Source of the DNA: Lytechinus pictus
Taxonomy: Eukaryota
Direction: 5' to 3'
DNA: 64,000 nucleotides
Assembly (NCBI RefSeq): GCF_037042905.1
Contig: NC_087254.1
Span: forward strand, 2,666,001 to 2,730,000
The first letter of the stretch is position 1; the number at the start of each line of letters is the position of its first letter. Positions 16,401 to 60,392 of the stretch are shown here, piece by piece. The notes beneath the pieces are model-generated. The model saw only the letters and a program-made list of their open reading frames with translations. It was not told the DNA's origin and did not search any database. The position numbers and the translations under genes were made by a program.

Positions 16401-19400
16401 AGTTTTGAGGCACATTTTCAGGCCAGAAATTTACTTATTTAACAAAATATTGTATAGAAAATAAATAACCAACATGAAAGAATAACATTTACTCTATCTG
16501 ATGGTGCAATAATATTTCATTTAACTTGAGGTTAAAACAGGTAAATTCTTAGAGAAAGAAAATCTCACGAATCACGAGATTTTGCAAGGAGGAGGATTCA
16601 GCCACGAGATGATTTGGATGAATCTGGCCTTTTTGCTCATTAGCATAGGGACCTGCGGTCTGACTGTTATAGTTTGTAGGAAACTCATGTCTCAAAATAA
16701 TCCCGCAGGTATGTAGCAGGTCCTCTGTCACGGGAGGGATACCGTCTCGCTGAAGTTTCTTTTTCAGGTGCGGTTTCTCCTATGGCAGTGGGTAATTGTG
16801 CATTAGTTGTACCCCGTGCTGTTGCACCATCTGTTGCATCGTCAGCTGGACTGTTGTCTGATGGCTCTCCAGGTACATCGTCATTGGGTGGAATGTTTTC
16901 TGAGGAGCTTTCCAAAGTGTGGTCGTCTGCCGAAGCTTCATATGGTTCACCTGCAAGGGTGCACCTGCAGCCTGGCTTCAGTCTGGTGGATCTCCAGGCA
17001 CATCCTCATCGGGCACGACGTCTTCTGGGGAACTTTCAGTATCATGGTCAGTTGTCAACGTGTCATCTTCTGGTCTCTCAGATGCCTCTTCACCTGCTGG
17101 CGTCTGGTCTGGTGGGTTTTCAGGCACCTCGCCATCTGGCTGGATGTCTGCTGGGGAGTCGGATGTGTTGTGATTATGCATGCTGACACCACCTGGCGAA
17201 CCTCTCTGCTCCAAAGTCTCCACCACGGGGTCTGAATTCCCAAGTCGGAAGCCCAATATCTTGATAGGGTTTCAGCCTATCAATGTGTACTTCCAATGGT
17301 TTAGACTTCCGTGACTGTTGAATCCTAACTGTGACATCTGACAGGCGAGTGACCACTAGGTAAGTGCCAAGCCATCTTGGTTGCAGTTTTGGGCAGCGAC
17401 CCTTTTCTCTGGTCTTCTTTCGAAGCCATGCAAATCGCCCAACGGCATAGGGAGCTGTATGCACCTTCCTGTCGGAGAACGACTTCTGCTCGCTGTCTTC
17501 AAGGTTTCTCTCGCTACCTTGTGAGCTATTTCTAGATGATTCCGGAACCTGGCACTGTAGTCTGTTTGGTCGTCATCTCCGTCGGTCTCGGGAGGAGGGA
17601 GATCCCAGCCCATAGGCATGGGATTGTCTCTCGCCCTAACATTAACATATTGGGTGTTTCACCGGTTGCATCACCTGTGCTGATCGAATGCTGTACCAGA
17701 CCGGTCTTCCCCAGGTCATTTGCAACTTGTGAAAAGATATCTCCAAAATCCTATAGCAATGCCGCCACTTTTCCACGCTGGTGCTCAGGGAGTTGCTCTG
17801 TACTTCGTTCATAGAGTTCTTCTGGGTGCTTAGGTACAGAGTTCGACATCTGGTCAGACTGAGGGGCACGGGCTTCCTCTATACCTTCTGCATCAGCTCG
17901 AACCACAGCCGCGGCTACTAGCAGGCCCTTCTTGCTCAATTCTGTAAAAAAATGCAGGGGCTTCCAACAATGCGACCCCGCTAATGGTCTCGGAGTCACA
18001 TCTAGTCGCTTCTCCTTTGAGAACAACATAATGCCCGGCGGGGACAATATTGGTTTCGGAGTCTACGGATCTGCAGCAAAATTGTCTGCGCTCTCGGTCC
18101 TTACAGGGGATAGACTGCCAAGGTGTTCGTAGTTCCATCCTACGACAGTCTAATTCAGCATGCATCTGAATTAACAGGTCAAGACCGATGATACCCTCAT
18201 TCTTCAATGTAGCCACGGACAGTTGGACCATGAAGACCAATCCTCCAATGTGCAATTCCATTGCAGCTTCTCCCCTGGTGTTAAAGTCGATCCATCAGCC
18301 TGTGTTACTCATTTTCTCCAAGATTAGCTGGTTTTCCTTGTCGATCATGTTGAAGACATTGTCGGCAATAAAGTATTGCGACGATCCAGTATCAATCAGA
18401 AATGTAACTGACTGACCATTGACTTTAGACTCAATGAAAATGCCTTGCCGCTTGACGTTTCCTGTCGTACCAACTCGAATTTGTCCAGCTCCTGGTTGGT
18501 CATCCTGTTTAGATGCTTGCTTTTTGTTCCTCTCTAAACTTCCTTCATCCTGACTGGAATGATTGGGTTCCACCCTCTCAGTATCTAGTACATTATTTGG
18601 GCAATCTTTCTTGAACTGTCCAGTTCCATGACAAAGATGACAGCGGTTGGTGCGTGTCTCTTCATAAGGGCAATTTTGGGCAAAATGTCCCTGTTGTCCA
18701 CAATTATAGCAAACTCCTTCAGACTGTCATCTCTTCTGAAGCTGTGGTCCAGTGTTGCCTCCCAGTAATGCACCGGTTACATGTTTGGTCAGCAAATCCA
18801 ACCAAGCTGTAAGATCAGCAAGCATCTTTTCCATCTTTCTGACGACTTCTGCTGTGTTGGGGCAGCAGGGCTCTTTATCTGCTCATTGCTTGTCAGTTCC
18901 CGACTGTGACTGTGATGGTGAGAATGTTTAAATTCGCTCCGTTCTGACTTCATCTTAAGGAATGCCTCTGTGTTCAGAGCCGCCTGTATGGCCTCATCCA
19001 AGGTACGAGGTTGAGCTCGAAACAACCCTTCGATTTCGAATTGCCGGGTTCACTACTGCTTCCATGAAATGATTTCGATCAAGTTTTTCTTGACCATCTG
19101 GGCCAAACTCTTGATAGGCCATCCCCGCCAGGTCTCGGATGCTTTGCCTAAGTTCTTGGAGTGTCTCCTGTGGCTTCCTACGTCGTGCTCTTAGCTCTGC
19201 TAAACAGACATCAGCCTTTCCTGAAGGACCGAAGAGATGTTGAAGTATGTTGACTAGTTCCTGATATGGCAGCTCCATCTCACCATGTTTCGCCAAAAGT
19301 TTCAGCGCTGGACCCCTCAAACTAGCTGCCAGGAAATATGATGCCTGCCTATCTGTCCAGTTGTTGATGACGGCACATGCCTCAAAATGCTCCAACTCCA

Positions 19401-20104
19401 AGTAATCAAGGATTGGAGCCTTCCCGTCAAAGCGGTCTGGTAACATGCATGGCTTTGCGTTAATTTTGACCTGTTGGTCCAAAGATGATCGATTATTAAA
19501 TCGGTGGTCGCCCAATCGGCCAGGAAATTGATTGTGTGCTGAAACAGTTTCATCCCTTCCTGGAAACTGTTGGTAACTCTGAGGACTAGATGACTCAGGA
19601 AAGGAAGGCCGTAGAAGGGGCGCATTGAATCGAGGGCTCTGCCGAATTCCCTCTACTGTGTGGTCAGACGTCCTAGGCAGGTTTTCAAACACTTGATGGA
19701 TATTTCCTATAGGCGGCATGCGCGGATAACCGATAGAAGTTGTTGAGTCACCCGCAATATCTGCCTGAGATGCGGTACTCCTAATCAGTCTACTCGGTTG
19801 AAGAGATGGTTCTGTTTCTTGCACTCCGTTATCCGTAGCCGATGTCCTAACGCCAGTGGAAGGCATGCTAGCAATTCCTGTATCACCATAATGTTGAAAG
19901 AGCGGAGTACTCTGCTGCGAGTGACGACGTGGCAGTGGAGACCCAGATGTTCGTTGCAAATCAGTAAGTTGTTCGTTGATTTCTGTAATCTGGTCTTCCA
20001 CTTGTTGGATCAGCTCCGCAGGTGTTAAATGATAAGCAGGATTCACCTGTACTGCTTCCATGTTCAACAGCTTAACTCAGACAATGGTGCTCGTCAACTG
20101 TTGA

Positions 20105-20285
20105 AAACCGACTAGTCTTTCTCCAACCAGTTCTGCACAGACCAGTCCTTCTCCTACCAGTTCTGCTCCAACCAGTCCTTCGCCAACCAGTTCTGCACCA
20201 ACCAGTCCTTATCCAACCAGTTCTGCACCAACCAGTCCTTGTCAAACCGGTTCTTACCAGCCAGTCCTTCTCTAACCAGCAGCAA
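20105..20285. repeat. 30-bp tandem repeat in the Gypsy A 5' leader
   Basis: accagtccttctccaaccagttctgcacca, about 5-6 copies. Confidence 0.85.
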
Positions 20286-21640: not shown

Positions 21641-23377
21641 GGAGTTTTGAAAATAAAGAAGTTGATCCTTAATTACTTTCATCAGGAATACTATTTACAT
21701 TTTGTACGTTATTTATTCTCAAATAGTACTTTTATAATATCTCCCTCTTTCCTAATATCTCTCCTCATTCCATTTAATATACTTTTATCGATTTCTTTCA
21801 ATTTTTCTCTTTCTCTCTCTCTCTCTATCATGTCTCTCTCTATATATATTTTAACGAAATGAATTGTTTATGTAATGTTCAGCATGGTTTCGTAATAGAG
21901 AGGAGCGTAGAATAATTCTTAATCCATGTTATAGTTGCATAGGGAAATTCAGTAATCGTTTGTAATCGATTATGTAGGGATTTTCTTGAAAATGTATGAA
22001 AGCACTATTTGTTGAGAAATAACGATGTTTAACTGTATGATTGTGTTAGCTATTTATCTTTAATTGTTCTTCACTGTTCGGGTATAAATAGTAGTTACAG
22101 TTACCATTGATGTTGTTGGAAAGATTTATTTCATGGCCCTAACTGTTTTTAAAAGAAGATTAAATTTTACGGCCTGACAATTTCCCTCCTCCACCGATGA
22201 GCTTGATCAAGCTCCATGCTCGATTATGAGCCATGCAATATGTTTGGCAGCAAGAGGTTTCTGAACGAAACTATGTTAAATCTCTATTGGATCCTGCTGC
22301 GACGACAGGCTGAGCATGATTTCTTCAGTACAGTTTTAAGAACTGACTGCATTGCTTCCTGCTTTTCCTTATTCTGTTGTATGGAGCTACAAGTATACAT
22401 GGTCGGAAAAGCAGAAGTACTGACTAGAGAAGGAGTGAGAATACTGACTTTAGTGAGATACGGAAAATACTGAATTTACCGAGATACTGAGATTAGTGAA
22501 AATACCGAGATGAGTGAGGATACTGAAAGTACTGACATTAATGAGATACTGAAATACCGAGATTACGGAGATACTGAATACTGGAATGACTGAGATAATG
22601 GAGATACGGAATAACGGAGATGTCGAAATCCACGTGATATAATCTAAGTTACTGAGAAGGAGCAAAGAGTCAGATGTGAAAAGACGGACTTTACACCAAC
22701 TGGTTGTATATTGCAGCCGAAACGAACCATATTGTACCAGACCGATTCAACGGCAGCACTCCGGTTCAAGACTATCTGAACCATTTCAGTTGTGCGTTGA
22801 GATCAATCGCTGGGAGAACCTTAGGCAATGGAATATCTGGCAGCCAGTCTGAGATGTTCTGCAGTTAAACTGCTAACGCAGAAAAGAGGAAGGCGACTCA
22901 CTTACTATGAACTAGTGGACAGAATGAGGAAACGATATGGTCCAGGTGGTAAGGCAGAGGTCTACCTTGCCGAGTTACGACAGCGACGGAGAGGACAAGG
23001 GGAGATTCTTCACGAATTAGGACAGAGCATAAGAGATATGACGGCTCTCGCCTATCCTGAATTTGATGAAGACCGACAAGGCCGGTTGGCGAGGGGGCAC
23101 TTTCTAGATGCGATTGTAGATTTCAAAATCCGAGAAGGGCTTTTCCGCTCGCGACCAAGATCACTGGAGGAGGCAATAGAAGCTGCTCTGAATGCGGAGG
23201 CGTTCTCAAGGATGGAGGATGAAAGGTGGAAATTCCAGTTAGCCAGGTACAGCCCTGCTGTAACCCGAGATTGCGACGGAATTCATTCCGTACTGGAAAA
23301 CCCTACTGGAAAGTAAGAATGAAAAGACTCATTCAAGACCTTCTCGAAATGGAATCGGAAGAGCCAGACGACCACAT

Positions 23378-25036
23378 CTGGTACCGGACAGATTTGATGG
23401 ACGCACACCTGTCGAAGATTATCTGCATCACTTTGAGGCCTGTGCTGGAGTAAACGGATGGACAAGAAGGGAAGCAGTTCAGTTCCTTGCTGCAAGTCTG
23501 AGGGGCCCTGCTGTGAAGTTGTTGACCCAACAACCTGGAGTGGTGTTGACATACGACGAGTTGGTATACAGGCTCAGAAACAGGTTTGGCCTAGGAGGCA
23601 AAGCTGAGGTATACCTGGCGGAGTTGAGGCAACGTCGTCGCCGACCAAAGGAAAGTCTCCAGGAGTTAGGACAAAGAATACGGGAGCTGTGTGGATTGGC
23701 GTATCCCGAATTCGACGAAAAGGGGCAGGATCGGCTTGCCCGAGGGCATTTCCTAGATGCCGTAGTAACACCAGAAATAAGAGAAGGATTATTCCGTGCT
23801 CAACCTCGCACATTGGATGATGCTGTGGAAGCTGCTTTAAACACAGAGGCCTTTCTGAGAATGGAGGGTCAGAGGAACGAAGTAAAGCGGGCTACAAGGT
23901 ACAGCCGAGCTCTGGAAGAGCAAGAGTGTGAGGTTGTAGCAGTGCGGGAACATCAACCAAGGAATCCAACTATCGACAAGATAGTAAAGGCTGTCATAGA
24001 CGCCTTGGATGAAAGAGACAGGACAAAGGAAACACAAATCAGGACCAAGTATCAGGAATCAAGAAAAGATGGCGTAGAGCCACAAAGAAAAAGAGAGGAA
24101 CCAAATAAATCAAAGATTGATGAACAAGAGGAACAAAGATGTTTCAACTGCAATGGATTGGGGCATTGGAGGAAAAACTGCCCATATCCAAAGAAAATGA
24201 AAGGAGGAACAGCAGCTTTTCAAGTATCCGAAAGGGAAATGATGAGCGAAATAAAAGAGAAAGAGGAACAAATCAGAGTCGGAACGACTCTAGATGGACA
24301 AGAGAAAAGAGGAACAGAGGAACAAACAACAGTCGGAGTGACTCTAGATGAACAAGAGAAAAGAGGAATAAAAGAACAAGAAAAAGAGGAACAAACCAGA
24401 GTCGGAGCGACTCTAGATATCAAGAGAAAAGGGCTTTACCTTCAAGGCAGAGTAAATGGACAAGAATTAAAATTATTGGTCGACACTGGAGCTACCAACA
24501 CTCTTATTGGAGAGAAAGTGTTTGACCAAATAGAGGAAATCAGAAGACCAGAATTACTACCAGTGACAAGTGTTGTACTACAAGCAGATGGATCTCAATT
24601 GAGAATCAGAAGAAAGTCAATGCTGGAAGTGCAGATTGGAGACATAGTCGTCACTACAATGGCTACAGTGGCTAGTCTAAAGAATGAGGGCATTTTAGGG
24701 CTAGATTTCCTAGTCAAAATCAATGCTGTATTAGACTGCCAAAAGATGGAATTGAGGACCAACTATGGCATAATTCCATGCCTAGATAGTAACGGAGAAT
24801 CATTCTGCAGGAGGATAGTAGCGGGAGAAGATTATTCGATTCCCCCAGGACACGAGGTGGTATTAGCAGGTAGAGTTACAGGCAGAAAAGTGTCACTAGG
24901 TGATGGATTAGTAGAACCACCTGCAAATCCAACAGAACTAATCAAGATGAAGCATGCACGTGTTCCATGGCTTCTAGACGTCTTGTTCGAATATACCCTG
25001 TGCTGCCAGACCGGGAATATAGGGAACCGCGAATGA
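23378..25036 (+). pseudogene. Gypsy B gag-protease open frame, truncated before RT
   Basis: LVPDRFDGRTPVEDYLHHFEAC..., CFNCNGLGHWRKNC knuckle, LLVDTGA aspartic protease. Confidence 0.88.
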
Positions 25037-25088
25037 GTCGATCTCTTATGAGGTCACCACGTCGCTCTGACTCTCGCTCACCACGTCG

Positions 25089-27150
25089 CACAGTGGGCCA
25101 GAATGAACCCAAAGTGCGCCAAAACCCATTATTCACACATTTGTACGATTAAATTTGGTAGATAGGGGTAATTTCACCCGTAGAATTCAATAAAAGTATT
25201 TTCAAATATTGATGACGTCGTTAAAATACTGTTTTCTGATTGGCTGTTAACATTTGAGAAGAAATTACATGTTTCTAATTGTACAATAAGTTTCAAATTT
25301 TCAGAAACTAGTTTTAGAGAAATTTCAGCAATAATTAAGCATATTAGCAAACAGCAAACACACAAACAGGCAAACAAACAAGATGGGTCTGTGCTCGGGG
25401 TACAATAATTCAATTGGTGACTTGAGTATCGCTTAAAGAGGGCGCCCTACCATGAATCCGGAATTGTAAAATTCAGAGTGAAATTGTAAAAAAAGTATTT
25501 TCATTCCCTGGGTACAATGATTAACCACACCTACATGAATTAAAATGGATTGATACCAGAAGTGGACAGTGAAATCTTTAAAATAATGATTCCAGTGATA
25601 AATAATATAGGCCGGGTCCTCTGCAGGTTAATCAGTACAAGGCCCTACAAGGCCTATCTATTTCACCAAGAACGGCGTATACAAAGTTATTCCGAATCAG
25701 AGTCTCTCTCTCTTCTATCTCACCAACTATTATGTCTTTGGTGAGAGGATCTATTAGCATACTTTGAACATCAGGGGGAAGAGGCTGTGATTGTTGTACT
25801 CTTAAAAACTTGCTTCTAATCACAATGTCACCTGTTACCATTAGTCTGTGGAATACATATAAAGTCAATGAGAGTCATAAACCAAACAATCCTTGAAATG
25901 ATAATATACACTTCCTTCTTGATCGATAGTAACAATTATAGCAAATTTAGAATGAGCCAATAGATAAACGAATTCATACGTGTATGTGAAGTTACAAACC
26001 CTTTTGGGGGGATAAATACTAATAATAATAATGATTGCGAGACAAATGAATACCCTCTAGCGATTATTTCATTCCGCAATAATGAACCTATTTAGTATTA
26101 ATGATAATGCAACCTATACATGTAATAGAGCCCACGTATATCCCATCTCTGTCCTATACACATTTTCATATTTTGTCAGAAAACTGCGTGAGACCTATCA
26201 CATCCCTAGTCATGTGTGTTATATTGATATACAGTAGTCCCTAACTTGGTTTATGAACAAAACTAATATAATCTTACCCGGGAATCTTACCTTAAGAATT
26301 AATCTTCTCAGGATGTCAGATATATGGAACAACGGGATGGAACAGTTTGGCATCAAAATGAAGTTGTGTTACATGTATTATTATATAGTTAGTGGAATTG
26401 GAAATGAAAGCTTGCCTTTACGTATGTTTAACGAAAATATTTTAAAGGCAGACACCAGTCACAAGAGCCAGACACTTGAGCCAGACACCCCCCCTCTCTC
26501 TCTCTCTCTCTCTCCCAGCACGCGACGGGGAGTTTGTTTAATGTCACCCGCAACGTTCGGCACGCGCATAATGGGACACTAACTTGGAACGATTTTTGTG
26601 ATAAATACGGCGAACATGTGGTTGGAAAATTGGTTATATCTCCAGAAAATGCACGTATATGCAGCTAAATTTGGTATCAGTGTAAAGCATGAACTATAAC
26701 AAAGACCGTCATGGTATTTACAGCGCAGCAATCGGCAGCAATTTGTAAAAGAAATGCTCATGAAAAAAAAAAATGCTAAAACCCCCCATTGTCAAATGGT
26801 TTCGTCCAAAATTGCCTCTGATGGGATCATTATTTTATCTTGAAAATCTCTGATCACTTAAAGCAATCATTCATCAATGAGCACCGTGAATAAGAAATAA
26901 ATTAAGCAATCCGTTTTGTTAAAGCAGTGAAATATCTAAAACGTGTCATTTACACATGCGGTAGCCGTAAAGAGTCATTTTCCGGTAATATTGAATAAAA
27001 ATGAGCAACTAATAATCAATTTAATGGAGAAATATTGTATGGAGGCATTCTACAGGTTCTTATCTTTGCTTAGAACATGAAAAAAACAAAATTTGTTTCA
27101 TGACCAAAAACCAGTTTTGGCGCACTTTTGCTCTCTCCTGGCCCACTGTG
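25089..27150. mobile_element. Non-autonomous Transib (RAG-related superfamily) DNA transposon
   Basis: Bipartite 37-bp TIRs starting CACAGTGGGCCAG; perfect 5-bp GC-rich TSD CGTCG on both sides. Confidence 0.85.
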
Positions 27151-27944
27151 CGTCGGTCAGAACGTGCTAGTTCGGCTCGTCATTCCCGTTCCCGATCACC
27201 AAGACGGAGGTCCAGGACAACACAAAAGGACATGCCTAAATCATCTGTTCCAGACTGTCCAAAGTCTCCTGAACCTGACCGATCAGAAGTATCTCCACGA
27301 CATGGTCGGAATTCTACCCCTGAACCAGAGGAGGAGCTGGACTATGATCAGAGGTCGCCTTCACCCCTTGATTTGAGATACACTTCTGGGAAAGTGGTGT
27401 CGGAGATGCCGTCTACCAGTGACTGGATAGAATGCACTGGTAGGGATGCTGAGACGCAGACTGACAACCCCCGCCAGAGAATTCAGGCAATCTTACAAGA
27501 AATAAGAACCGGCGGATCAGAAGAGAAGGTGACCCTGAACAAGTCAACCGACACATTCCAGATTCCACCAGATGTCACCTAGCTTTGTTCGTACCACGGA
27601 GCGTTACATCACTAAGGAAGGAGAACTGTTAGAAGTAGTGACGGAGGAACTCAAGAAGAAAGAGTCGTCTTGAACAGTATCTCTCGTGTTCTTTAGAGTT
27701 ATGTTGTTAATACAATGACACTATAAGAAGGCATGTCACCATGTACCTTGGACATTATTTTTCATGCCGCATTGCTTAGGAGTTATCTTTGGACTAAAGC
27801 TATTGTGTTTTGTTGAACCTGAACATTGTTTTTTAGGACTCTATGGATAGTTTGATACACATGGATACGTTTTGTTAACGTGCTACAGTTTTTGATGTTG
27901 TTAAATGACGCTCGGGGGCCGAGCTTTGAAAAATAAGGGATTTG

Positions 27945-29244: not shown

Positions 29245-29247
<3 letters not shown>
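27945..29247 (+). repeat. 3' LTR of Gypsy B with internal short tandem repeats
   Basis: TG...CA ends, preceded by a purine-rich tract and followed by (TA)n. Confidence 0.7.
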
Positions 29248-29319
<72 letters not shown>

Positions 29320-29396
29320 GTGTGAAGTTATACATGTACTACAGCTTTGGCAACTCTTTTATATTTAAATATTGTGTGAAAGAAATGGATGAAGAG

Positions 29397-29480
<84 letters not shown>
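29248..29480. repeat. (TA)n microsatellites
   Basis: Two long TA runs. Confidence 0.97.
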
Positions 29481-30201
29481 TGTATATATCTCATTTGGAA
29501 TCATTAATATATTATACAATTTTTACTTTAACGTGACTCGCGTAGAATTATAAGGAACAATGACATCTGATAAATTGTAATGTAATTGTATACTTTAATG
29601 ATCAATGAAAATGAAATTTTACATTCAATCGATATCAATTGTCTTAATTTCTTTTTTCTCACAGTCAGTCTATACCATTTGTTTAATTACTATAAATCTC
29701 GTGTACAATGTCACTAAATAATATAGAACCAGATTAAGTTTATATCGTCAATTATTTAGCGAATCAATACCGTCCAAGTTTATTCATAACGGCATGTATA
29801 AATTTACATCATCATGGGTGGATATTTCCTTCCTTGTACAATTTGTTCGTACCACTATACAATCTATTTCTATATTAAATGTTCAAAAGACAAATCGAGA
29901 ATTATAATATATACACGTTATTAAGATTTAAACTGATCGGTGCTTCCACTTCAAAAATAATATCAGGAAATCTTGCATTGTCCGAATTTCGAAAAATAAC
30001 ATTTAGTAATTGGTAGAATGAAATGAGAGAAATAATTAGTGACCATATACCTCAAGATTAAAAAAAGGTACCACTTTGATCATATAAAGTTTTTCATTTA
30101 TATACTAAATTATACAAACGATAATAAAGAGTGATGAAAACAACTCATAGAAATCTCAAATAAGTCAAATATATACAGAGTTATACATTCTTATACAAAT
30201 T

Positions 30202-35728: not shown

Positions 35729-36926
35729 CTTTTTTCATCTCCCTCCTCACCCATCACGTTAATAGTTATTCTTTTCTACAGAAACTAAGAATGGATGCCA
35801 CTTGGATCAGGCTATTTGATCTCTAAAGGTTGTTTTCCTCTCTCCTATCCTTAATTGACAATGTATTTGATCTCTTAACGTTGTTTTCCCCCTCCTCCCC
35901 GCTCACGTTGACAATTATTCTTTTGTGCAGAAACTAAGAATGGATGCCACTTGGATCATTTTTTTTATAAATCGATTGAGAAATCTTGATGTTTGGGCTT
36001 TCTGTGCACACTACTCTGAACGCCTTTTCTGGTAGGTAAAGTGTTCTTTGCCTTTTTCAAAGTATTCTCTGACATCCACGTACACCTGCTTACGAAATGT
36101 CTTTGCGACGAGGTATTTGGGTCTGTCCTCCTTCCAGCTGATTGGACATTTTTTTCCGAACCTTCGTCACCGTCGCTTCTTTCAGTTTCCCCACTCCACT
36201 TACAGGTTTCTACCCCGTCTCTACCAAATTGACGATGGTTGGATGGTTTCATCTTTAACTCCATCTATTCTTTCTGATTTTTGTTAGGCTGCATATCCAC
36301 GTACGGTAGTTCATCGGCTACATGCAGTGGATTCTCACTATATACAACATCCGACTCGTGGCTTCCGTATCTTCTGCTCCTCCCCCTCCTTTCCTTTCCG
36401 GGGGTGACGGTATAGATGTGTCGTAGATTAGATGCTGGTATAATACCCTGCCATGGTTCCGCTTCTCCCTCGATTGCTGCAGTCCCTCGCTTGGTACGAT
36501 ACGTTGCCTTGTTCATTTTCCCCCTCGTTTTACACCTTTCCTTTTTTTTTACTCCATACCTTTCGCATCTTCTCCCATGACTTGTCGACCCCGCCTTTCG
36601 CAATATTGTCGAAATCCTATGACGTCATCTGGGGCCACTACGTCATCGGTATGACAACATGTTCATGACGTCATGACCATAACGTCATCATATCTTTGAT
36701 TTTAATTTATTCAATTCAATTCAATTCAATTCATTTATTTTCTCTTTTTCAATCTTTTTACATTTACAATGATAGCTCAATATACATATTTACAAAATAT
36801 AACATTTAAATCATTTATATAATACAGTAATACTATGAAATCGAAAGAGAACGAGACCAACTAAAAAGCAGAGCTTGTAGGGTGAAGGCCCCCTTTTATA
36901 AGTACATTATTCATAATGTACGCTAA

Positions 36927-37461
36927 CCCAGGGAACTCCCGCCCGCGCAGCGGGCCGGAGCCCAGGAGCTTACCGTGTATTTGACCATACTCACGGGACT
37001 ACCGGCGGGACTAGCGTGATTTATGGTCTAAATATTTCTCCAAATGAATTGTGAAAACTGAAATTATGCACTTACCACGATTATATGGATGAAGGTCTAA
37101 CGAGTGGCAGTTTCCTGACAACGAGGCACAGACTGGAACTTCAAAAAACGAAAAGTTCTCTCCTTCTACACCAGTCTCGATCGGCCATTTTGTTACGATT
37201 CATAACAAAAATGGCCGATCGAGACGGGGGTATAAGGAGAGAACTTTTCGTTTTTTTGAAGTTCCAGTCTGTGCCTCGATGTCAGGGAACTGCCACTCGT
37301 TAGACCTTCATCCATATAATCGTGGTAAGTGCATAATTTCTGTTTTCACAATTCATTTGGAGAAATATTTAGACCATAAATCACGCTAGTCCCGTGAGTA
37401 TGGTCATATACACGGTAAGCCCCTGGGCTCCGGCCCGCTGCGCGGGCCGGAGCTCCCTGGG
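36927..37461. mobile_element. 535-bp foldback MITE, piggyBac-like
   Basis: Near-perfect palindrome over its whole length; CCC..GGG ends; ctaa/TTAA flanks. Confidence 0.85.
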
Positions 37462-37960
37462 TTAAATGTATGCATGATTATGACGTCATATCCATATCTA
37501 TATTTCATACACGTATGAATTTATATTCATCTTCATAAAACAATTAAAAAAGTTATGACGTTATAGACATCCCTATACTACTGGCGGAGAGCGTTCGCGA
37601 AAGCATTATTTGTATAATTTGGCCTCACCACGCAACTGAGCGTGAAGAGAAAAGCTGTATTTTGACCTATGAAAAATAATACATAACACCAATAAAACAG
37701 AAAAATATCAACTAATGATAAGACTCTGACTTTTAACTCGAATATATTGAAAAGTAAAAACACAAAACGTAGTTTCATTTGATTTCATAACATTATACAT
37801 CAAATAAACATTGTTGTGTAGGATATATAATACAGGTGAAAAATATATAGCCCAGTTATGTTTATAGACAGCTATCAACCTTAAACAAAACAAAAACAAA
37901 CTTGGCATAATGTTTTCATTTCAGTGGCGAGGGTCATTTTTTAACAGACCTGATGCGATC

Positions 37961-39067
37961 CTAAGGTTTTGCTGCCATGGTGCCACCCACGGTACTTATG
38001 TCGATGACACCTCTTCCAAGTGCATTATTTCTTTCAGAGTTTCGAGTGACCATGTCTTTCAGAGCCTCCTTAAATTCAGGGTACCTTACAGCGTAGATGA
38101 TAGGGTTTGCGCAGGAGTTATAGAATCCAAGAACGGTAAGCATTGAATGGAGATCACTGTTAAGGTAGGATTCAGGAACCCACCCGATGTTATAACCAAG
38201 GTAAGCAATCTGGTTCGGAGTCCAGCAGATAAAGTAGACTAGAATGACTATGATCATCATCTTCAGGATACGTTCTCTGGCCACAATGTGGAGTGATGGC
38301 ATTGGGTTTCTGTTGGAGAGATGGGTAGTCATTCCTTGAGCGTTGTTAGATTGTTGACTTAGCTTACGAGCAATTAGAATCTGTGTAATTAGCATGGCGA
38401 AACATGGCACAAAGAGACGCAGACACAACCAGTAATAAGCGATAATAAGTTTTGTGTAGCGGTTTAGATACTGTTCTTTGCACTTGTTGGTGAAGCCGTC
38501 TACCGAATGCACAAAGAAGGCGAAGAGTACAGATAAGACAGATAGAATCCAGATAAGACAGATTAAGTTCGAGATACGACGCCGGGTAATGAGGCGCTTG
38601 ACATGAAGAGGGTACACCACAGCAATGTACCTTTCAACAGATATAGATATTAGAAGATATGCTGAGGCCGTAATGGACGCCCAGAGGAGGCTTTGTGTGA
38701 TAACAAATCTGCAGTAGAGCTCACCTAACCAGGTTTTTGGAATGTACGTTGGCGAAGGATATGGTATGAGCATCACTGAAGTTAAAAAGTCTGCAACAGC
38801 AAGACCTCTGATCAAGGTATCTGTGGATCTGTTTTTCTTCCTGCGATAAAAAAGAACAACAATCACTAGGAGATTTCCTAACATGCCAAGGATTGCAGAG
38901 ATAAGTTGCAGGATAACTGACCATGACCAATCCATTGGACTCCAGGAAAAATTTACAAGGATTGTCGTATTTGCATCAAGTCCGACCTGCGTTTCATTCG
39001 ATAGTCCATTGACAATCGTGGAATCATATTGAGTACTTTCATCCATCATCGGTTTCGTCGTTTTCAT
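37961..39067 (-). CDS. Intronless class A (rhodopsin-type) GPCR, galanin/allatostatin-A-receptor-like orphan, copy 1
   Basis: 7 hydrophobic helices; GN, LAVAD, ERY, CWTP and NPIIY motifs; N-glycosylation sites; first ATG at 39067 (ORF track starts at a TTG, 39109). Confidence 0.93.
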   Translation of the reverse strand: MKTTKPMMDESTQYDSTIVNGLSNETQVGLDANTTILVNFSWSPMDWSWSVILQLISAILGMLGNLLVIVVLFYRRKKNRSTDTLIRGLAVADFLTSVMLIPYPSPTYIPKTWLGELYCRFVITQSLLWASITASAYLLISISVERYIAVVYPLHVKRLITRRRISNLICLIWILSVLSVLFAFFVHSVDGFTNKCKEQYLNRYTKLIIAYYWLCLRLFVPCFAMLITQILIARKLSQQSNNAQGMTTHLSNRNPMPSLHIVARERILKMMIIVILVYFICWTPNQIAYLGYNIGWVPESYLNSDLHSMLTVLGFYNSCANPIIYAVRYPEFKEALKDMVTRNSERNNALGRGVIDISTVGGTMAAKP

Positions 39068-39729
39068 GATCAGTTCTAGAAATGATGGACTGGTGATCTT
39101 AGTGGCCAATTGCTTGTCTGTTAGTATGAACTGTCCGTTTAAGTATTAGTATTACCACGTAGTACAATAATTACCCTTTTGATTTCATAGGCATTATCAT
39201 GGCTGATTCGGCAACAGTATCTTAACAGTGACAACAATATCAACAAGACGACGGAAGGGCTGAACACAGTTGTTCGACTGTGCTTTGTGCAAACTCTTTC
39301 TTCAACTCAGAGTAGACATACTATGAGAGTACGATATTTACTATCACTTGGAGATGAAATCTATGCACGTCAAAGTTGTTTTCCTAAATATTTTCCAAAT
39401 GGCATGCAGTTCGCCCCCATATTTATATAAACAGAAGTAACATGATAAATGAAAATATTTTTTATGATATCCAGACGTCGAAGTTATAATAAAAGCTCGA
39501 TATATCAGTGGACCAGTTTAATTAAAGAAAGAGCACTATATACGTTGACGCTGATCGATGATTGACTTCGGTTCATAATATTGATATCGTTCGAATCAGT
39601 AGTACCGGTAGTTTACATAGAATTAGCATTGACTTTGTGTACGTTTTGAGGGCTTGAATACAAGGCATATGAGGAATTATCTCTTAAACTTTTGATTTAT
39701 TTGCCCACCGGATTGTTAATAAATATTGT

Positions 39730-41883: not shown

Positions 41884-44145
41884 TACAAAAACTTACATGT
41901 TCCTATGTTGAACTGAAGCTGCCATTTCTTAGACCATTTTATGAGTATATCTAAATCAGCTTGCAGGATTTCACAATAAGTATTTGTAACTTTTTCTCTG
42001 AGGATCTTGGTATCATCTGCATATATCCGTACAATGCTCCTCATTATTTCTGGCAGGTCATTGATGAATATCACAAATACTGTTGGACCGAGGACACTGC
42101 CTTGCGGTATTCAACTCTTTTACTCACTCCACCTTGAAAACTGACTATCGATAGCAACTCTCTGTCTACGTCCTGTCAGGGAAGCATGTAACCACTGCTA
42201 AAGATTGCAAGTTATTCCATATCCTTTGAGTTTGCTTAATAGACGCTCATGGGGTACAAAATCGGAAGCTTACGAAAGTCAAGGTATATTGTGTCAATGT
42301 CATGTCCACTGTCTAAGGATGATGCCCAGAGCTCCATAACTTCCAATAACTGGGTTACACATGATCTACCAGGGAGCAGGGAGGAACCCATACGGGGCAT
42401 GACATGAAGCCTCGGATTATAGATTCCAGAATCTTGCCGATAACAGACGTGAGACTGATCGGGCGATAATTTTCAACAGCATTGCACAGGAGTGATGTTT
42501 GCATCTTTCCAAGATTATGGGAGTGCTCCTTCTTTTACAGATTTCCTGAATATGATAGTCATGGGTACATATCGTGTCAGAACTGGAGGTGATGTCAATG
42601 TCAGAAAGAGTGATACCATTATGTCGTTCCTTTAGATCAGGGACATAGTTGATAACTTGATAGTTGATAGTTGTAACACCCTGCACATTCTTTAACACTC
42701 CCAAGCTTCTACGAGACTGATGTAAAATATTTCTTTAAACATCTCTCTCAAAGTCTTGTCTTATTTTCTGAGCATTTTCCTTAGTTTCTTTGCTTCAGCC
42801 CTAAACCTTTCAAAATTTCTCCTAGAACGATTTTTCCTGTATGATCTCCATGCCCTATACTTTAGTTTGTGCTGCCTCATTGCAGTTCTAGTCATCCTAA
42901 TCTTGTTCTTTCTTCTCATTTTAGAGTCAGCCTTAGAGATGTTTATGTCTATCTCAGTCTCAAATTCGGATGAGAAGAGGTCCCATGCTTGATGGACATC
43001 CAAGTTTTAAAGATTTTCCACCCTGTTTACATCCAGAATAGCTATGTTTATTGCTGCATAGTGTCCTCTGTGCTACCTATTATATCTATATCCAGTTTGC
43101 TTTTTGGTTGAGATGTTGGGATATAGGTCTACATTAAACAGCAAGCACACATGGTCACTTAATCCTAGATTTGGGAAATATCATATTACTGATCATTTCC
43201 TCCTTGTGATCAGTAGATCAAGGATGGTAGGATATGCTGCCCATCCCTAGTCTGAGTGCTCTCTGTGATATGCTGATGTAAAAACATTATATTCGACAGT
43301 CAATACATATCTTTTCATCTGATGTACGAGACTCCCATATAGGTTCCAACAAATGGTAGGGCAGTTGAAATCTCCTACGACAAGCAAGTGTGATGGGTTA
43401 CTGCTTACAACCTCATGGAAAAGTTGGCATAATTTATCAGTATTGGAGTTTGCTTTCCTCAAAGTGGGGCTACGATATATAGTACCAACTGTCAGTGTGT
43501 CATTGTTCTTAATATACGCATACCTATCCATATACTCTCCTCAAAATCAGTTTCAAAATGGACTTAACAGTGGATGCATCCCTTTTTGTACATATACCAC
43601 TACGCCTCGTACTCCCTTTTTCTCGATGTTTGTGTAGGTTATATAGCTATCTATTTTGTAGTTTTCCTCGATTGGTTTTACATTAAAGTTTTTTGGCATC
43701 TGGTTGTTAACTAACAGATAGTAAAGCTAACTCATCCAGCTTGTTGAGTAAGCTGTCACTGTTTGTATACAAGACTCTCATCCCATCATTATTTATGTTT
43801 CTAAAGTAAACTTTGTCTCCAGTCTTGCATCTATCAGCTTCATGTTCTTCATCTGATATAGAAGACGAATATTCTGTGTCATTACCTGATTCACAGATGG
43901 AAATTTCAGATTAAAAACAAGTAGAAGCATTATCAGTCAAAGAAATGTTCTCTTCCTGGGCATGAACCAACCCTGTATTAATTGGCATGCTCAATTTGAG
44001 TCCCATTTTCAAAGTCCAATGTTCATGTATGTCTCCCTCTATTTATTTACATTGGACATGCATAATATGCATGTCCAATTGGTGGTGCCTGATGTCAGAT
44101 GTTTGATGGAGTCTCTGCATGGCTTGGGCTACTTTTAGTTGAAGT

Positions 44146-44259: not shown

Positions 44260-45185
44260 GTTGAAGTACCAAGTAAAGAATTATCTCCTTTCTTTTTACT
44301 ACTATCGTCAAGGTCAGTGCTCCTTGTATTTTCATAATATGTGGCAACATCTACTTGTATATCTTTAGTTGATGTCTGGCTATCTGAACAGATAGGACAT
44401 GGGTGTAAGAAGACTATGCAAAGAGCTGTTGTCCCCATGATTGTCTTGAATGATCGAATTAGCCTGCTTCCCAACAGGACTATTATCTTCAAAACTGTCC
44501 CCAGTCTTTGGTTCTGGGACACAAGGCTTCCGATTCTCTGGGTTGTCTCTGTGATATGTGCTATCAGGAATTTTTTTTATTCCTGAGGCATTAGAAGCAG
44601 TTATTACAATGGATTTAGAAGGAGCTAGAACATAGTGATAGAGATGTTTTGGTGTTTCTAAGTGGTACTTCGTCGTGGCACAATCTTATCATGTTTGATT
44701 ACTAGGTTTTGCTCACCGTTCTCTCTTCCTTTCTTTACTTCCGCTCAGTTCCTTGTGTTGAAGCCCTAGCTGAGCAGTTCTATCTGGGTCAACATATGAG
44801 TTTACCCATACAGACTGAATGAACGAATCTATTAGACCAATTGTACACAGTCTCCCTCTCTCTCTTGAGCTCTTTCGAATAAAAGACTATGTACTTACGA
44901 ACTCTCTATTTGCATAGGCCTACCTCTTTTGTGTAGTTTAGGTTGTGTACAGACTGAATGAACGAATCGATTAGTTTTGTACAGACCGTACGAATCTATT
45001 ATACCCATTGTTTACCATCTCACTCTCCACCCCTTATCTCTGAACGAATCCATTACCTTTTACTCTAAAACGACTCCATTAAATTTTACTCTCACTGAAT
45101 GAACGAATCTATTAATATCATTTCATCTCAAATCGAATCTACTCTTGGAAAAATTTGATATATTACTACCATCCTCAATCGATCC

Positions 45186-45487
45186 TTCTGACATTGACAT
45201 CACCTCCAGTTCTGACACGATATGTACCCATGACTATCATATTCAGGAAATCTGTAAAAGAAGGAGCACTCCCATAATCTTGGAAAGATGCAAACATCAC
45301 TCCTGTGCAATGCTGTTGAAAATTATCGCCCGATCAGTCTCACGTCTGTTATCAGCAAGATTCTGGAATCTATAATCCGAGGCTTCATGTCATGCCCCGT
45401 ATGGGTTCCTCCCTGCTCCCTGGTAGATCATGTGTAACCCAGTTATTGGAAGTTATGGAGCTCTGGGCATCATCCTTAGACAGTGGA
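45186..45487 (+). repeat. Inverted 302-bp copy of LINE segment 42305-42606
   Basis: Reverse-complement match with one mismatch seen; identical peptides appear in the ORF track. Confidence 0.95.
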
Positions 45488-59288: not shown

Positions 59289-60392
59289 CTAGGGTTTTGA
59301 CGCCATTTTGGTGCCACAAATTGTTCTTATCTCTATGACACCTCTTCCAAGTGCATTATTTCTTTCAGAGTTTCGAGTGACCATGTCTTTCAGAGCCTCC
59401 TTGAATTCAGGGTACCTTACTGCATAGATGATCGGGTTTGCGCAGGAGTTATAGAATCCAAGAACTGTAAGCATTGAATGGAGATCACTGTTAATGTAGG
59501 ATTCAGGAACCCAACCGATATTATAACCAAGGTAAGCAATCTGGTTCGGAATCCAGCAGATAAAGTAGATTAGAATGACTATGATCATCATCTTCAGGAT
59601 ACGTTCTCTGGCCACAATGTGGAATGATGGCATTGGGTTTCTGTTGGAGAGATGGGTAGTCATTCCCTGAGCGTTGTTAGATTGTTGACTTAGCTTGCGA
59701 GCAATTAGAACCTGTGTGATTAGCATGGCGAAACATGGCACAACGATACGCAGACAGAACCAGTAATAAGCTATAATAAGTTTTGTGTAGCGGTTTAGAT
59801 ACTGTTCTTTGCACTTGTTGGTGAAGCCGTCAACCGAATGCACAAAGAAGACGAAGAGTACAGATAAGACAGACAGGATCCAGATAAGACAGATTAAGTT
59901 CGAGATACGACGCCGAGTGATGAGGCGCTTGAAATGAAGAGGGTATACCACAGCAATGTACCTTTCAACAGATATAGATATCAGGAGATATGCCGAGGCT
60001 GTAATGGACGCCCAGAGAAGGCTTTGTGTGATAACAAATCTGCAGTAGAGCTCACCTAACCAGGTGTTTGGAATGTACGTTGGCGAAGGGTTTGGTATGA
60101 GCATCACTGAAGTTAAGCAGTCTGCAACAGCAAGACCACTGATCAAGGAATCTGTTGATCTGTTCCTCTTCCTGCGATGAAAAAGAACAACAATCACTAG
60201 AATATTTCCTACAATGCCAAGGATTGCAGAGATAAGCTGCAGGATAACAGACCATGACCATTCCATTGGACTCCAAGAAAAACTTGCAAGGATTGACGAA
60301 TTTTCATCAAGTCCATCCTGCGTTTCATTTGATAGTCCATTGACAATCATGGAATCATATAGAGTACTTTCATCCATCATCAATTGCGTCAT
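59289..60392 (-). CDS. Intronless class A GPCR, copy 2 (~90% aa identity to copy 1)
   Basis: Same 7TM motifs (ERY, CWIP, NPIIY); intact frame; first ATG at 60392. Confidence 0.93.
   Translation of the reverse strand: MTQLMMDESTLYDSMIVNGLSNETQDGLDENSSILASFSWSPMEWSWSVILQLISAILGIVGNILVIVVLFHRRKRNRSTDSLISGLAVADCLTSVMLIPNPSPTYIPNTWLGELYCRFVITQSLLWASITASAYLLISISVERYIAVVYPLHFKRLITRRRISNLICLIWILSVLSVLFVFFVHSVDGFTNKCKEQYLNRYTKLIIAYYWFCLRIVVPCFAMLITQVLIARKLSQQSNNAQGMTTHLSNRNPMPSFHIVARERILKMMIIVILIYFICWIPNQIAYLGYNIGWVPESYINSDLHSMLTVLGFYNSCANPIIYAVRYPEFKEALKDMVTRNSERNNALGRGVIEIRTICGTKMASKP

What the first reader, a model, noticed from the sequence alone, without database searches (positions are those of the whole stretch)
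25089..27150. Transib-type element with a perfect RSS heptamer and bipartite, RSS-like ends
Seen: both ends read CACAGTGGGCCAG - 9 variable bases - AAAGTGCGCCAAAAC, flanked by the 5-bp TSD CGTCG. CACAGTG is the exact V(D)J heptamer. At the left end CCAAAACCC (7/9 match to the nonamer ACAAAAACC) starts exactly 23 bp after it. Established: Transib and RAG-like transposons have CAC ends, make 5-bp GC-rich TSDs and are the source of RAG1/RSS; echinoderms carry RAG1-like genes. Inference: a non-autonomous element mobilised in trans by a Transib or RAG-like transposase. The ends are symmetric (no 12/23 asymmetry), which favours Transib. No convincing transposase ORF is visible inside.
Basis: partly seen in the sequence, partly recalled or inferred. 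Interest (0 to 1): 0.72.

Follow-up and report, generated by a model that had tools for sequence, protein, structure and literature searches.

The report
Non-autonomous Transib transposon in sea urchin
This is a 2-kb cut-and-paste DNA transposon with no transposase gene, of the Transib type (the family from which the vertebrate RAG1 recombinase and its signal sequences derive), sitting in a Lytechinus sea-urchin genome; it is real and cleanly bounded, but it is an ordinary member of a kind already known from sea urchins.

Summary
Window 25089-27150 is a 2,062-bp element.

- **Ends:** the terminal inverted repeats are 37 bp. A perfect 13-bp block starts with CACAGTG, 9 non-matching bases follow, then a perfect 15-bp block.
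- **Target-site duplication:** CGTCG on both sides.
- **Empty sites:** two paralogous loci in Lytechinus variegatus carry the uninterrupted target with one copy of the 5-mer. This proves the exact ends and the 5-bp duplication.
- **Other copies:** three further single termini of the same family turned up in environmental contigs. They share block 2, have end-specific spacers, and sit in the same GC-rich target CGNC(G/C), mostly preceded by AC.
- **Coding capacity:** the interior has no transposase remnant, and no RAG1/Transib-like ORF lies elsewhere in the window.

The ends fit the published Transib pattern: a CAC heptamer, a spacer of about 23 bp, an A-rich patch, and a 5-bp GC-rich duplication. 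They lack the A-rich "TR2" at positions 8-10 that marks RAG-like (RAG1L/RAG2L) transposon ends, including a starfish one.

The "nonamer" claim is weaker. The 7/9 match holds at one end only, and the conserved second block lies mostly in what would be the RSS spacer.

Verdict: a new member of a known kind. The autonomous partner was not found.

The parts
25084..25088 (+). Left copy of the 5-bp target-site duplication, CGTCG
   Evidence: Read directly. Paralogous empty sites L002 and L001 carry a single 5-mer (CGTCG, CGTCA) at this point.
25089..25125 (+). Left terminal inverted repeat, 37 bp. Heptamer CACAGTG 25089-25095; block 1 25089-25101; end-specific 9-bp spacer AATGAACCC 25102-25110; block 2 AAAGTGCGCCAAAAC 25111-25125.
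   Evidence: The five-termini alignment A2 shows block 2 extended by CCAWAAY (beyond the bases the search pattern required) and a variable spacer.
25126..27113 (.). Interior of 1,988 bp, AT-rich (whole element 36% GC), non-coding, with a (CT)n run near 26495-26515.
   Evidence: The longest stop-free stretch is 114 aa. No Pfam family reaches threshold in 20 stop-free segments of 42 aa or more. The three longest segments give no RAG1/Transib hit against PDB sequences. No similarity to the rest of the window. The right-hand 140-180 bp is 74-80% identical to L003 and L005.
27114..27150 (-). Right terminal inverted repeat, 37 bp, with the same two blocks. Read inward from the terminus, the spacer is GAGAGAGCA.
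27151..27155 (+). Right copy of the 5-bp target-site duplication, CGTCG
24967..25088 (+). Upstream half of the interrupted target: an arginine/serine-rich ORF of a repeated retroelement-associated unit.
   Evidence: Translation. The uninterrupted paralogs P0001 and P0002 read ...DSRSPR(R/Q)SERA....
27151..27582 (+). Downstream half of the interrupted ORF, continuing in the same frame.
   Evidence: Translation. It is 81-82% identical to the L. variegatus proteins P0001 and P0002, and 90% identical at DNA level to L001 and L002.

Best explanation
This is a non-autonomous cut-and-paste DNA transposon of the Transib superfamily. It sits in a Lytechinus (most likely L. variegatus) genome, inside an arginine/serine-rich ORF that belongs to a repeated gag-protease retroelement unit.

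**Shown:** the exact ends, the 5-bp duplication of a CGTCG target, the lack of coding capacity, the existence of related copies elsewhere, and their shared target motif.

**Inferred mechanism:**
- A Transib transposase (a RAG1-core-like DDE enzyme) encoded elsewhere in the genome binds each end at two sites. These are the terminal block with the CAC heptamer, where cleavage occurs, and a second block about 23 bp (roughly two helical turns) further in. The 9 bp between them act only as a spacer of fixed length.
- The enzyme excises the element by nicking and forming a hairpin on the flanking DNA.
- It then inserts the 3'-OH ends 5 bp apart into a GC-rich, near-palindromic target, AC-CGNCG-GT. 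Repair of the gaps yields the 5-bp duplication.
- Both ends have the same geometry, so pairing needs no 12/23-type asymmetry.
- The perfect blocks and the intact duplication suggest a fairly recent insertion.
For: - **Ends and duplication:**
- **Empty sites:** window 24979-25088 aligns to L002 6064-6173 and window 27151-27534 to L002 6169-6549. The two alignments overlap by exactly 5 bp. L001 shows the same arrangement, and the junction alignment is A1.
- **Protein-level empty site:** the paralogs read straight through the insertion point.
- **More termini:** a 21-base pattern found L003, L004 and L005. None of the following was required by the pattern: block 2 extends by CCAWAAT; the flanks read AC-CGGCC, AC-CGTCG and AC-CGACG; and L003 and L005 are 74-80% identical to the window's right subterminal 140-180 bp.
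- **Target rarity:** CGNCG occupies only 0.15% of window positions.
- **Negative control:** the single hit among 596 Gb of prokaryotic contigs (L006) lies inside a bacterial dehydrogenase gene and has none of these extra features.
- **Fit to Transib:** the published 38-bp consensus end is CACAATG, a 23-bp variable spacer, then an A-rich 9-mer. Transib makes 5-bp GC-rich duplications, and the sea-urchin element Transib1_SP is flanked by CGGCG (PMC1131882). All five termini here have CAC at positions 1-3 and AA at the positions equivalent to nonamer 5-6.
- **Literature context:** Transib elements with intact ends are reported in many echinoderms, whereas no RAG-like element with ends has been reported there (bioRxiv 10.1101/2023.08.20.553239).
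- **No transposase:** none inside the element or elsewhere in the window.
Against: - No autonomous copy with these ends was found, so the link to a Transib transposase is by anatomy only.
- No other copy has both ends, so the 5-bp duplication is directly proven for one insertion. The other copies show only matching half-sites.
- The three extra termini were found with a pattern that demanded both blocks intact, so conservation of the blocks themselves cannot be measured from them.
- I could not compare the ends with Repbase or Dfam Transib entries for sea urchins.
- The heptamer CACAGTG is one base closer to the starfish RAG-like end (CACAGCG) than a clear separation of the two groups would predict.
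Confidence: 0.8

Rival explanations
1. The element is a non-autonomous RAG-like (RAGL / 'TransibSU') element, moved by a RAG1L-RAG2L transposase pair of the sea urchin rather than by a canonical single-protein Transib transposase.
For: - RAG-like transposons also have CAC ends and 5-bp duplications (PMC7204232).
- L. variegatus carries many RAG1L-RAG2L copies whose ends were never found (PMC4411706; bioRxiv 10.1101/100735).
- The starfish TransibSU-1_PM end starts CACAGCG, a 6/7 match to the heptamer here, and has a 13-bp perfect repeat, the same length as block 1.
- The hemichordate family-A RAG-like element has ends organised as heptamer, conserved segment, spacer, then an A/T-rich nonamer-like segment. 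That layout resembles this one superficially.
Against: - Positions 8-10 here are GGC. RAG-like ends have a conserved AAA there: the protostome consensus is CACTWMCAAACKTYKBB, with a matching A-rich region in deuterostome RAG-like ends, and the starfish end is CACAGCGAAAAAT.
- The family-A ends are asymmetric by 10 bp. These ends are symmetric in all five termini.
- L. variegatus RAG-like copies are described as untranscribed fossils without ends.
- The published L. variegatus RAG1L/RAG2L locus text contains none of CACAGTG, CACTGTG or GGGCCAG.
Confidence: 0.1
2. The element belongs to another CAC-ended or unrelated superfamily (CACTA/EnSpm, Chapaev, hAT, Ginger and so on), or is a chance inverted repeat with no mobility.
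For: CAC... termini are shared with the CACTA and Chapaev elements. No transposase is linked to this element.
Against: - The 5-bp duplication is proven by two empty sites.
- To my knowledge, those other superfamilies make duplications of 2-4 or 8 bp. Kapitonov & Jurka state that 5 bp distinguishes Transib.
- Independent insertions exist at other loci with the same target motif.
- The chance expectation for the full structure is negligible. The one true chance hit, L006, looks quite different.
Confidence: 0.04
3. The element is a functional recombination signal pair in the V(D)J sense, that is, host-used RSS-like sites flanking a DNA segment that is removed or rearranged somatically.
For: The heptamer is the exact RSS heptamer. 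An A-rich patch lies 23 bp from it. AA occupies the critical nonamer positions 5-6 at all five termini.
Against: - The flanks are a retroelement-borne RS-rich ORF, not receptor gene segments.
- The ends are symmetric, with no 12/23 pair.
- The nonamer match is 7/9 at one end and 4-5/9 at the other four termini.
- The duplication of the target shows that the segment arrived by transposition.
Confidence: 0.01

Closest known systems
Transib superfamily non-autonomous elements, e.g. TransibN1_SP and the autonomous Transib1_SP of Strongylocentrotus purpuratus (Kapitonov & Jurka 2005, PMC1131882)
   Same: - 5'-CAC...GTG-3' termini and repeats of about 38 bp, with a heptamer one base from the CACAATG consensus.
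- An A-rich patch about 23 bp further in.
- A 5-bp GC-rich duplication. Transib1_SP is flanked by CGGCG and this element by CGTCG, both of the form CGNCG.
- No coding capacity, a sea-urchin host, and nesting inside another repeat.
   Different: - The heptamer is the exact RSS form, CACAGTG.
- The second conserved block (AAAGTGCGCC...) lies mostly in the stretch that is variable across Transib families.
- The 9-bp spacer comes in two end-specific types.
- The target preference appears to extend to AC-CGNCG-GT.
- I could not compare the sequence itself with the Repbase entries.
RAG-like (RAGL-B / TransibSU / ProtoRAG) transposons, e.g. TransibSU-1_PM of the starfish Patiria miniata (PMC4411706) and ProtoRAG of amphioxus
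   Same: CAC heptamer-like termini, a 5-bp duplication, a 13-bp perfect terminal repeat in the starfish element, and the existence of non-autonomous derivatives.
   Different: Those ends carry an A-rich TR2 directly after the heptamer (AAA at positions 8-10), which is bound by the RAG1L C-terminal tail. This element has GGCCAG there. RAG-like ends rely on the first 15-17 bp, whereas these ends have a second perfect block at 23-37.
Vertebrate V(D)J recombination signal sequence (23-RSS)
   Same: An identical heptamer, CACAGTG. With a 23-bp spacer, the critical AA of the nonamer (positions 5-6) is present at every terminus.
   Different: There is no 12/23 asymmetry. The nonamer match is poor beyond CAAAA. 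The strongest internal conservation falls in the 'spacer'. The sites are transposon ends with a target duplication, not signals next to receptor gene segments.
HzTransib of Helicoverpa zea, the biochemically characterised Transib (Hencken 2012; Carmona 2016, PMC4840297)
   Same: It is the model for the proposed mechanism: nick-hairpin cleavage at the CAC end, invariably 5-bp duplications, and GC-enriched targets.
   Different: It is an insect element that carries its own transposase. Its ends show 'little or none' of the nonamer similarity. No biochemical data exist for the element described here.

Membership tests
Transib superfamily (canonical Transib) | 5-bp target-site duplication | tested here: met
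   CGTCG flanks both ends. The alignments of the two flanks to paralog L002 overlap by exactly 5 bp, and L001 shows the same arrangement.
Transib superfamily (canonical Transib) | Termini 5'-CAC...GTG-3' with a heptamer close to CACAATG | tested here: met
   CACAGTG at both ends, 6/7 to the Transib consensus. The same heptamer is present in L003-L005, but there it was required by the search pattern.
Transib superfamily (canonical Transib) | Inverted repeat of about 38 bp with an A-rich nonamer-like patch about 23 bp from the heptamer (A at the positions equivalent to RSS nonamer 5 and 6) | tested here: met
   The repeat is 37 bp. Positions 33-36 are AAAA at both window ends. AA at nonamer positions 5-6 holds at all five termini. 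The overall nonamer match is only 4-7/9.
Transib superfamily (canonical Transib) | Preference for GC-rich targets | tested here: met
   The flanks are CGTCG, CGGCC, CGTCG/CGACG and CGACG in four independent insertions. The window is 39% GC, and CGNCG occupies 0.15% of its positions.
Transib superfamily (canonical Transib) | An autonomous partner with the same ends that encodes a roughly 700-aa RAG1-core-like DDE transposase and no RAG2-like gene | not testable with these tools
   No tool here searches the Lytechinus genome by DNA. No such ORF lies in the window or in L003-L005.
RAG-like (RAGL-B / TransibSU) transposons | A-rich TR2 directly after the heptamer (AAA at positions 8-10) | tested here: not met
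   Positions 8-13 are GGCCAG at all five termini. Compare the consensus CACTWMCAAACK... and the starfish end CACAGCGAAAAAT.
RAG-like (RAGL-B / TransibSU) transposons | A partner element carrying a convergent RAG1L-RAG2L gene pair between the same ends | not testable with these tools
   The genome could not be searched. The published L. variegatus RAG1L/RAG2L locus text lacks the end motifs, which is weak evidence against.
RAG-like family A (PflRAGL-A type) | Asymmetric 5' and 3' ends, with a spacer difference of about 10 bp before the nonamer-like segment | tested here: not met
   Block spacing is identical at both window ends, and the first 60 columns of the five-termini alignment have no gaps.
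V(D)J recombination signal sequences | Heptamer CACAGTG plus nonamer ACAAAAACC at 12 or 23 (+/-1) bp, used as a 12/23 pair | tested here: not met
   The heptamer is exact. The nonamer matches 7/9 at the left end and 5/9 at the right. Both ends have 23-type spacing, so there is no 12/23 pair.

The most novel reading that the evidence does not exclude
These could be the long-sought transposon ends of a sea-urchin RAG-like (RAG1L/RAG2L) transposase. They would be a variant end in which the A-rich TR2 is replaced by GGCCAG and a second, nonamer-region block has taken over binding. The exact RSS heptamer would then be mobilised in an echinoid by a RAG1L-RAG2L pair, and RAG-like transposition would have been recently active in Lytechinus, where only end-less fossils are known.
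Probability: 0.07. Interest if true: 0.8.

Novelty: new member of a known kind. Interest (0 to 1): 0.3.

Why it matters
Transib elements are the living relatives of the transposon that gave rise to RAG1 and the V(D)J signal sequences, and sea urchins carry both Transib and RAG1L/RAG2L genes. A well-bounded, apparently young, non-autonomous element with three features is a convenient natural substrate:

- the exact RSS heptamer;
- two separately conserved binding blocks at fixed spacing;
- a sharply defined target, CGNCG.

It could be used to ask how a Transib-type enzyme reads a bipartite end, and whether sea-urchin RAG1L/RAG2L, or vertebrate RAG, can act on it.

As it stands, it adds a family member and some anatomical detail (end-specific spacers, an extended target motif). 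It does not add a new principle.

Tried and rejected
- **Transposase remnant inside the element.** I translated all six frames, ran Pfam on 20 stop-free segments, and searched the three longest against PDB sequences, which include HzTransib, RAG1 and BbeRAG1L. Only sub-threshold noise came back. The best was a MACPF-like hit, E = 0.0022 and below the family cut-off.
- **Partner transposase in the window.** Pfam on all ORFs of 130 aa or more found gag-protease, a reverse-transcriptase fragment and two GPCRs, but nothing RAG1-like.
- **More copies in the window or in L001/L002.** None.
- **Second ends or coding regions in L003-L005.** None.
- **Literature text search for the end sequences.** Only unrelated primers and guide sequences. 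The supplements of Kapitonov & Jurka 2005, which show TransibN1_SP ends, are not held as text.
- **Viral contig scan.** No hit.
- **Prokaryotic genome scan.** One hit, L006, rejected as chance. It lies inside a bacterial short-chain dehydrogenase ORF, block 2 does not continue, the flank is ATGGT, and there is no subterminal similarity.
- **Intron-like (introner) reading.** I considered that the insertion might be spliced out of the RS-rich ORF and rejected it by inspection. The only plausible GT...AG pair (inside the left heptamer, and 5 bp beyond the right duplication) would shift the frame by one base.
- **The 310-nt inverted repeat at 42305/45178.** I checked whether it is a second Transib. 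Its ends are not of the CAC / 5-bp type.
- **Operator rules.** The window has no N runs. No contig looked human.

Full report
**1. What is in the sequence**

Window 25089-27150 is bounded by inverted repeats at 25089-25125 and 27114-27150.
- Read inward from each terminus, positions 1-13 (CACAGTGGGCCAG) and 23-37 (AAAGTGCGCCAAAAC) are identical at the two ends.
- All six differences lie at positions 14-22.
- Six random mismatches among 37 positions would fall within one 9-bp span with probability 7.7e-4. The ends really are bipartite.
- CGTCG flanks both ends (25084-25088 and 27151-27155). Moving the boundary by one base either way destroys the direct repeat.
- Neither block occurs anywhere else in the 64-kb window.
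- The element is 2,062 bp and 36% GC. The window has no N runs.

**2. Proof of insertion: paralogous empty sites**

The flanks form one reading frame. The upstream part ends ...DSRSPR and the downstream part begins RRSERASS....
- A word-index protein search with the downstream part found two Lytechinus variegatus proteins at 81-82% identity. Both read straight through the junction...DSRSPRRSERA... and ...DSRSPRQSERA....
- Their loci were fetched as L001 and L002.
- At DNA level, window 24979-25088 aligns to L002 6064-6173 and window 27151-27534 to L002 6169-6549. The overlap is exactly five bases. L001 behaves the same way.
- The junction alignment (A1) shows the empty sites ...CTCGTCG-GTCAG... 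and ...CACGTCA-GTCAG.... The filled site reads ...CACGTCG-[CACAGTG...CACTGTG]-CGTCG-GTCAG....
- So the termini, the 5-bp duplication and the act of insertion are shown directly.

**3. Other copies and target choice**

One scan of metagenome contigs used a 21-base pattern: block 1, nine free bases, then the first eight bases of block 2. It returned three contigs, each with one terminus (L003, L004, L005). They are real relatives, not chance hits, because they share features the pattern did not require:
- Block 2 continues as CCAWAAT.
- L003 and L005 are 74-80% identical to the window's right subterminal 140-180 bp, and 87% identical to each other over 364 bp.
- The DNA directly outside the terminus reads AC-CGGCC, AC-CGTCG and AC-CGACG. 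The window's two half-sites read CA-CGTCG and AC-CGACG.

CGNCG occupies only 0.15% of window positions, and ACCGNCG only 0.013%. The family therefore selects a near-palindromic GC-rich target, AC-CGNCG-GT.

The 9-bp spacer comes in two types. One is AATGA.... (window left end, L004). The other is GA..GAG.A (window right end, L003, L005). This suggests that left and right ends are distinguished only there. Spacing is identical at all five termini, and the alignment of the first 60 columns has no gaps.

L004 is metazoan DNA. A galactosyltransferase (Glyco_transf_7C) exon ends 70 bp from the insertion.

The same pattern found nothing in viral contigs. In 596 Gb of prokaryotic contigs it found one hit, L006, which lies inside a bacterial dehydrogenase gene and has none of the extra features. 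That hit is a useful picture of what a chance match looks like.

**4. Coding capacity**

- The longest stop-free stretch inside the element is 114 aa.
- Twenty stop-free segments gave no Pfam family at threshold.
- The three longest gave no RAG1, RAG1L or Transib hit among PDB sequences.
- The interior matches nothing else in the window or in L001/L002.
- ORFs of 130 aa or more elsewhere in the window are a gag-protease, a reverse-transcriptase fragment, two GPCRs and unassigned ORFs. None is RAG1-like.
- The element is therefore non-autonomous, and its partner is not in this window.

**5. Host and setting**

The two GPCR ORFs exist as exact sequences in NCBI, on a 37.18-Mb contig. Their 90% clusters hold L. 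variegatus and L. pictus proteins. Together with the L. variegatus paralogs, this places the window in Lytechinus, most likely L. variegatus.

The target ORF lies just downstream of a gag-protease ORF (23513-25036; zinc knuckle and aspartyl protease). It belongs to a repeated unit that also occurs on two other chromosomes at 85-92% identity. This is a transposon nested in another repeat, the situation from which Transib duplications were originally defined.

**6. Comparison with known systems**

*Transib.* Kapitonov & Jurka (PMC1131882) describe the following:
- a 38-bp consensus end made of CACAATG, a variable 23-bp spacer and an A-rich 9-mer;
- universally conserved CAC, and AA at nonamer positions 5-6;
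- 5-bp GC-rich duplications;
- family-specific target motifs;
- the sea-urchin elements Transib1_SP (flanked by CGGCG) and TransibN1_SP.

All the end and target features tested here are met.

*RAG-like transposons.* They share CAC and the 5-bp duplication, but their ends carry an A-rich TR2 at positions 8-10. Examples are the protostome consensus CACTWMCAAACK... (with a matching A-rich region in deuterostome ends; PMC7204232) and the starfish TransibSU-1_PM end CACAGCGAAAAAT (PMC4411706 supplement 3). This element has GGCCAG at those positions.
- The hemichordate family-A element has asymmetric ends. These ends are symmetric.
- In echinoderms, no RAG-like element with ends has been reported, while Transib elements with intact ends are said to be common.
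- L. variegatus RAG1L-RAG2L copies are described as end-less, untranscribed fossils.
- The published L. variegatus RAG-like locus text lacks these end motifs.

*RSS.* The heptamer is exact, and the critical AA is in place with a 23-bp spacer. The 7/9 nonamer match holds at the left end only and uses two bases outside the conserved repeat. The other four termini score 4-5/9, a level reached by 7% of random positions. The best-conserved inner bases (23-32) would lie in the RSS spacer. "RSS-like" is therefore true only in the general Transib sense.

**7. Mechanism**

*Shown:* insertion with a 5-bp staggered target duplication at a CGNCG site; two conserved blocks at fixed spacing; no transposase in cis.

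*Inferred from HzTransib and RAG biochemistry (and the papers cited there):*
- A Transib transposase supplied in trans binds the terminal block, cleaving at the CAC border by nick and hairpin.
- It also binds the inner block, whose centre lies about 23 bp (roughly two helical turns) away, so on the same face of the DNA.
- It pairs two geometrically equal ends and integrates them into the GC-rich target.
- The perfect blocks and duplication suggest a young insertion, but 33 bases are too few to date it.

**8. Verdict**

- The thing is a new member of a known kind. I could not check whether Repbase or Dfam already list it.
- Confidence is 0.8 for a non-autonomous Transib, 0.1 for a RAG-like partner, and the remainder for other readings.
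- Interest is modest (0.3). It would rise sharply only if genome-wide copies showed RAG1L-RAG2L between these ends.

**9. Limits**

- No tool here searches the Lytechinus genome by DNA, so copy number, two-ended copies and the autonomous partner remain open.
- The extra termini were ascertained with a pattern that required both blocks intact.
- The host species of L003-L005 are unknown, apart from L004 being metazoan and L003 sharing a repeat with the window.

Noticed in passing
window 22828-25036 (+), with 24967-25088 and 27151-27582: A gag-protease ORF (23513-25036; zinc knuckle plus retroviral-type aspartyl protease) has a partial upstream duplicate of its N-terminal part (22828-23316). An arginine/serine-rich ORF follows in the -1 frame. 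NCBI names the L. variegatus paralogs of that ORF 'SRRM2-like' and 'PRPF38A-like', yet they have no Pfam domain and travel with the gag-protease unit on at least three chromosomes. They are probably retroelement-borne ORFs rather than splicing factors.
   Followed up: partly
window 37961-39109 (-) and 59289-60404 (-): Two intronless rhodopsin-type GPCR genes (QRFP-like peptide receptor / opioid-receptor-like in NCBI naming) lie 21.3 kb apart within a segmental duplication that is 83-94% identical in the repeated stretches.
   Followed up: partly
window 42305-42614 and 45178-45487: A 310-nt inverted repeat, 99% complementary, encloses 2.5 kb. It is probably another DNA transposon or a foldback element. 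Its ends are not CAC-type and no 5-bp duplication is evident.
   Followed up: partly
window 37006-37148 / 37252-37394 (also 36924-37004 / 37384-37464): A near-perfect 143-nt hairpin (98%) with a 103-nt loop lies just downstream of the first GPCR gene. It looks like a MITE or foldback.
   Followed up: no
window 50884-52726 (-): A reverse-transcriptase fragment (RVT_1, E = 1.9e-10) sits next to ORFs that contain a 213-nt tandem duplication (51592-52017). Short repeats of 62-82 nt (95-98% identical) at 50075-50215 recur 3.3 kb away at 53368-53509.
   Followed up: no
window 26480-26665 (+), inside the element: A sub-threshold MACPF/perforin-like match (E = 0.0022, 18.6 bits against a cut-off of 21.5). 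It is either noise or a small captured fragment of a host gene.
   Followed up: no
L003 400-1250: The interior of the related element in this environmental contig is filled with inverted and direct copies of a motif of about 38 nt (core ATTCCACGAAGTGACACATCGCG). The window's copy lacks this motif.
   Followed up: no
L006 166-195: The only hit of the end pattern among prokaryotic genomes lies inside a short-chain dehydrogenase gene of a Ferruginibacter MAG. It is a chance match and serves as a negative control.
   Followed up: yes
window 29245-29520 and 20078-20257: Long (TA)n microsatellites, and a 15-nt tandem array adjoining ORF 18994-20067.
   Followed up: no
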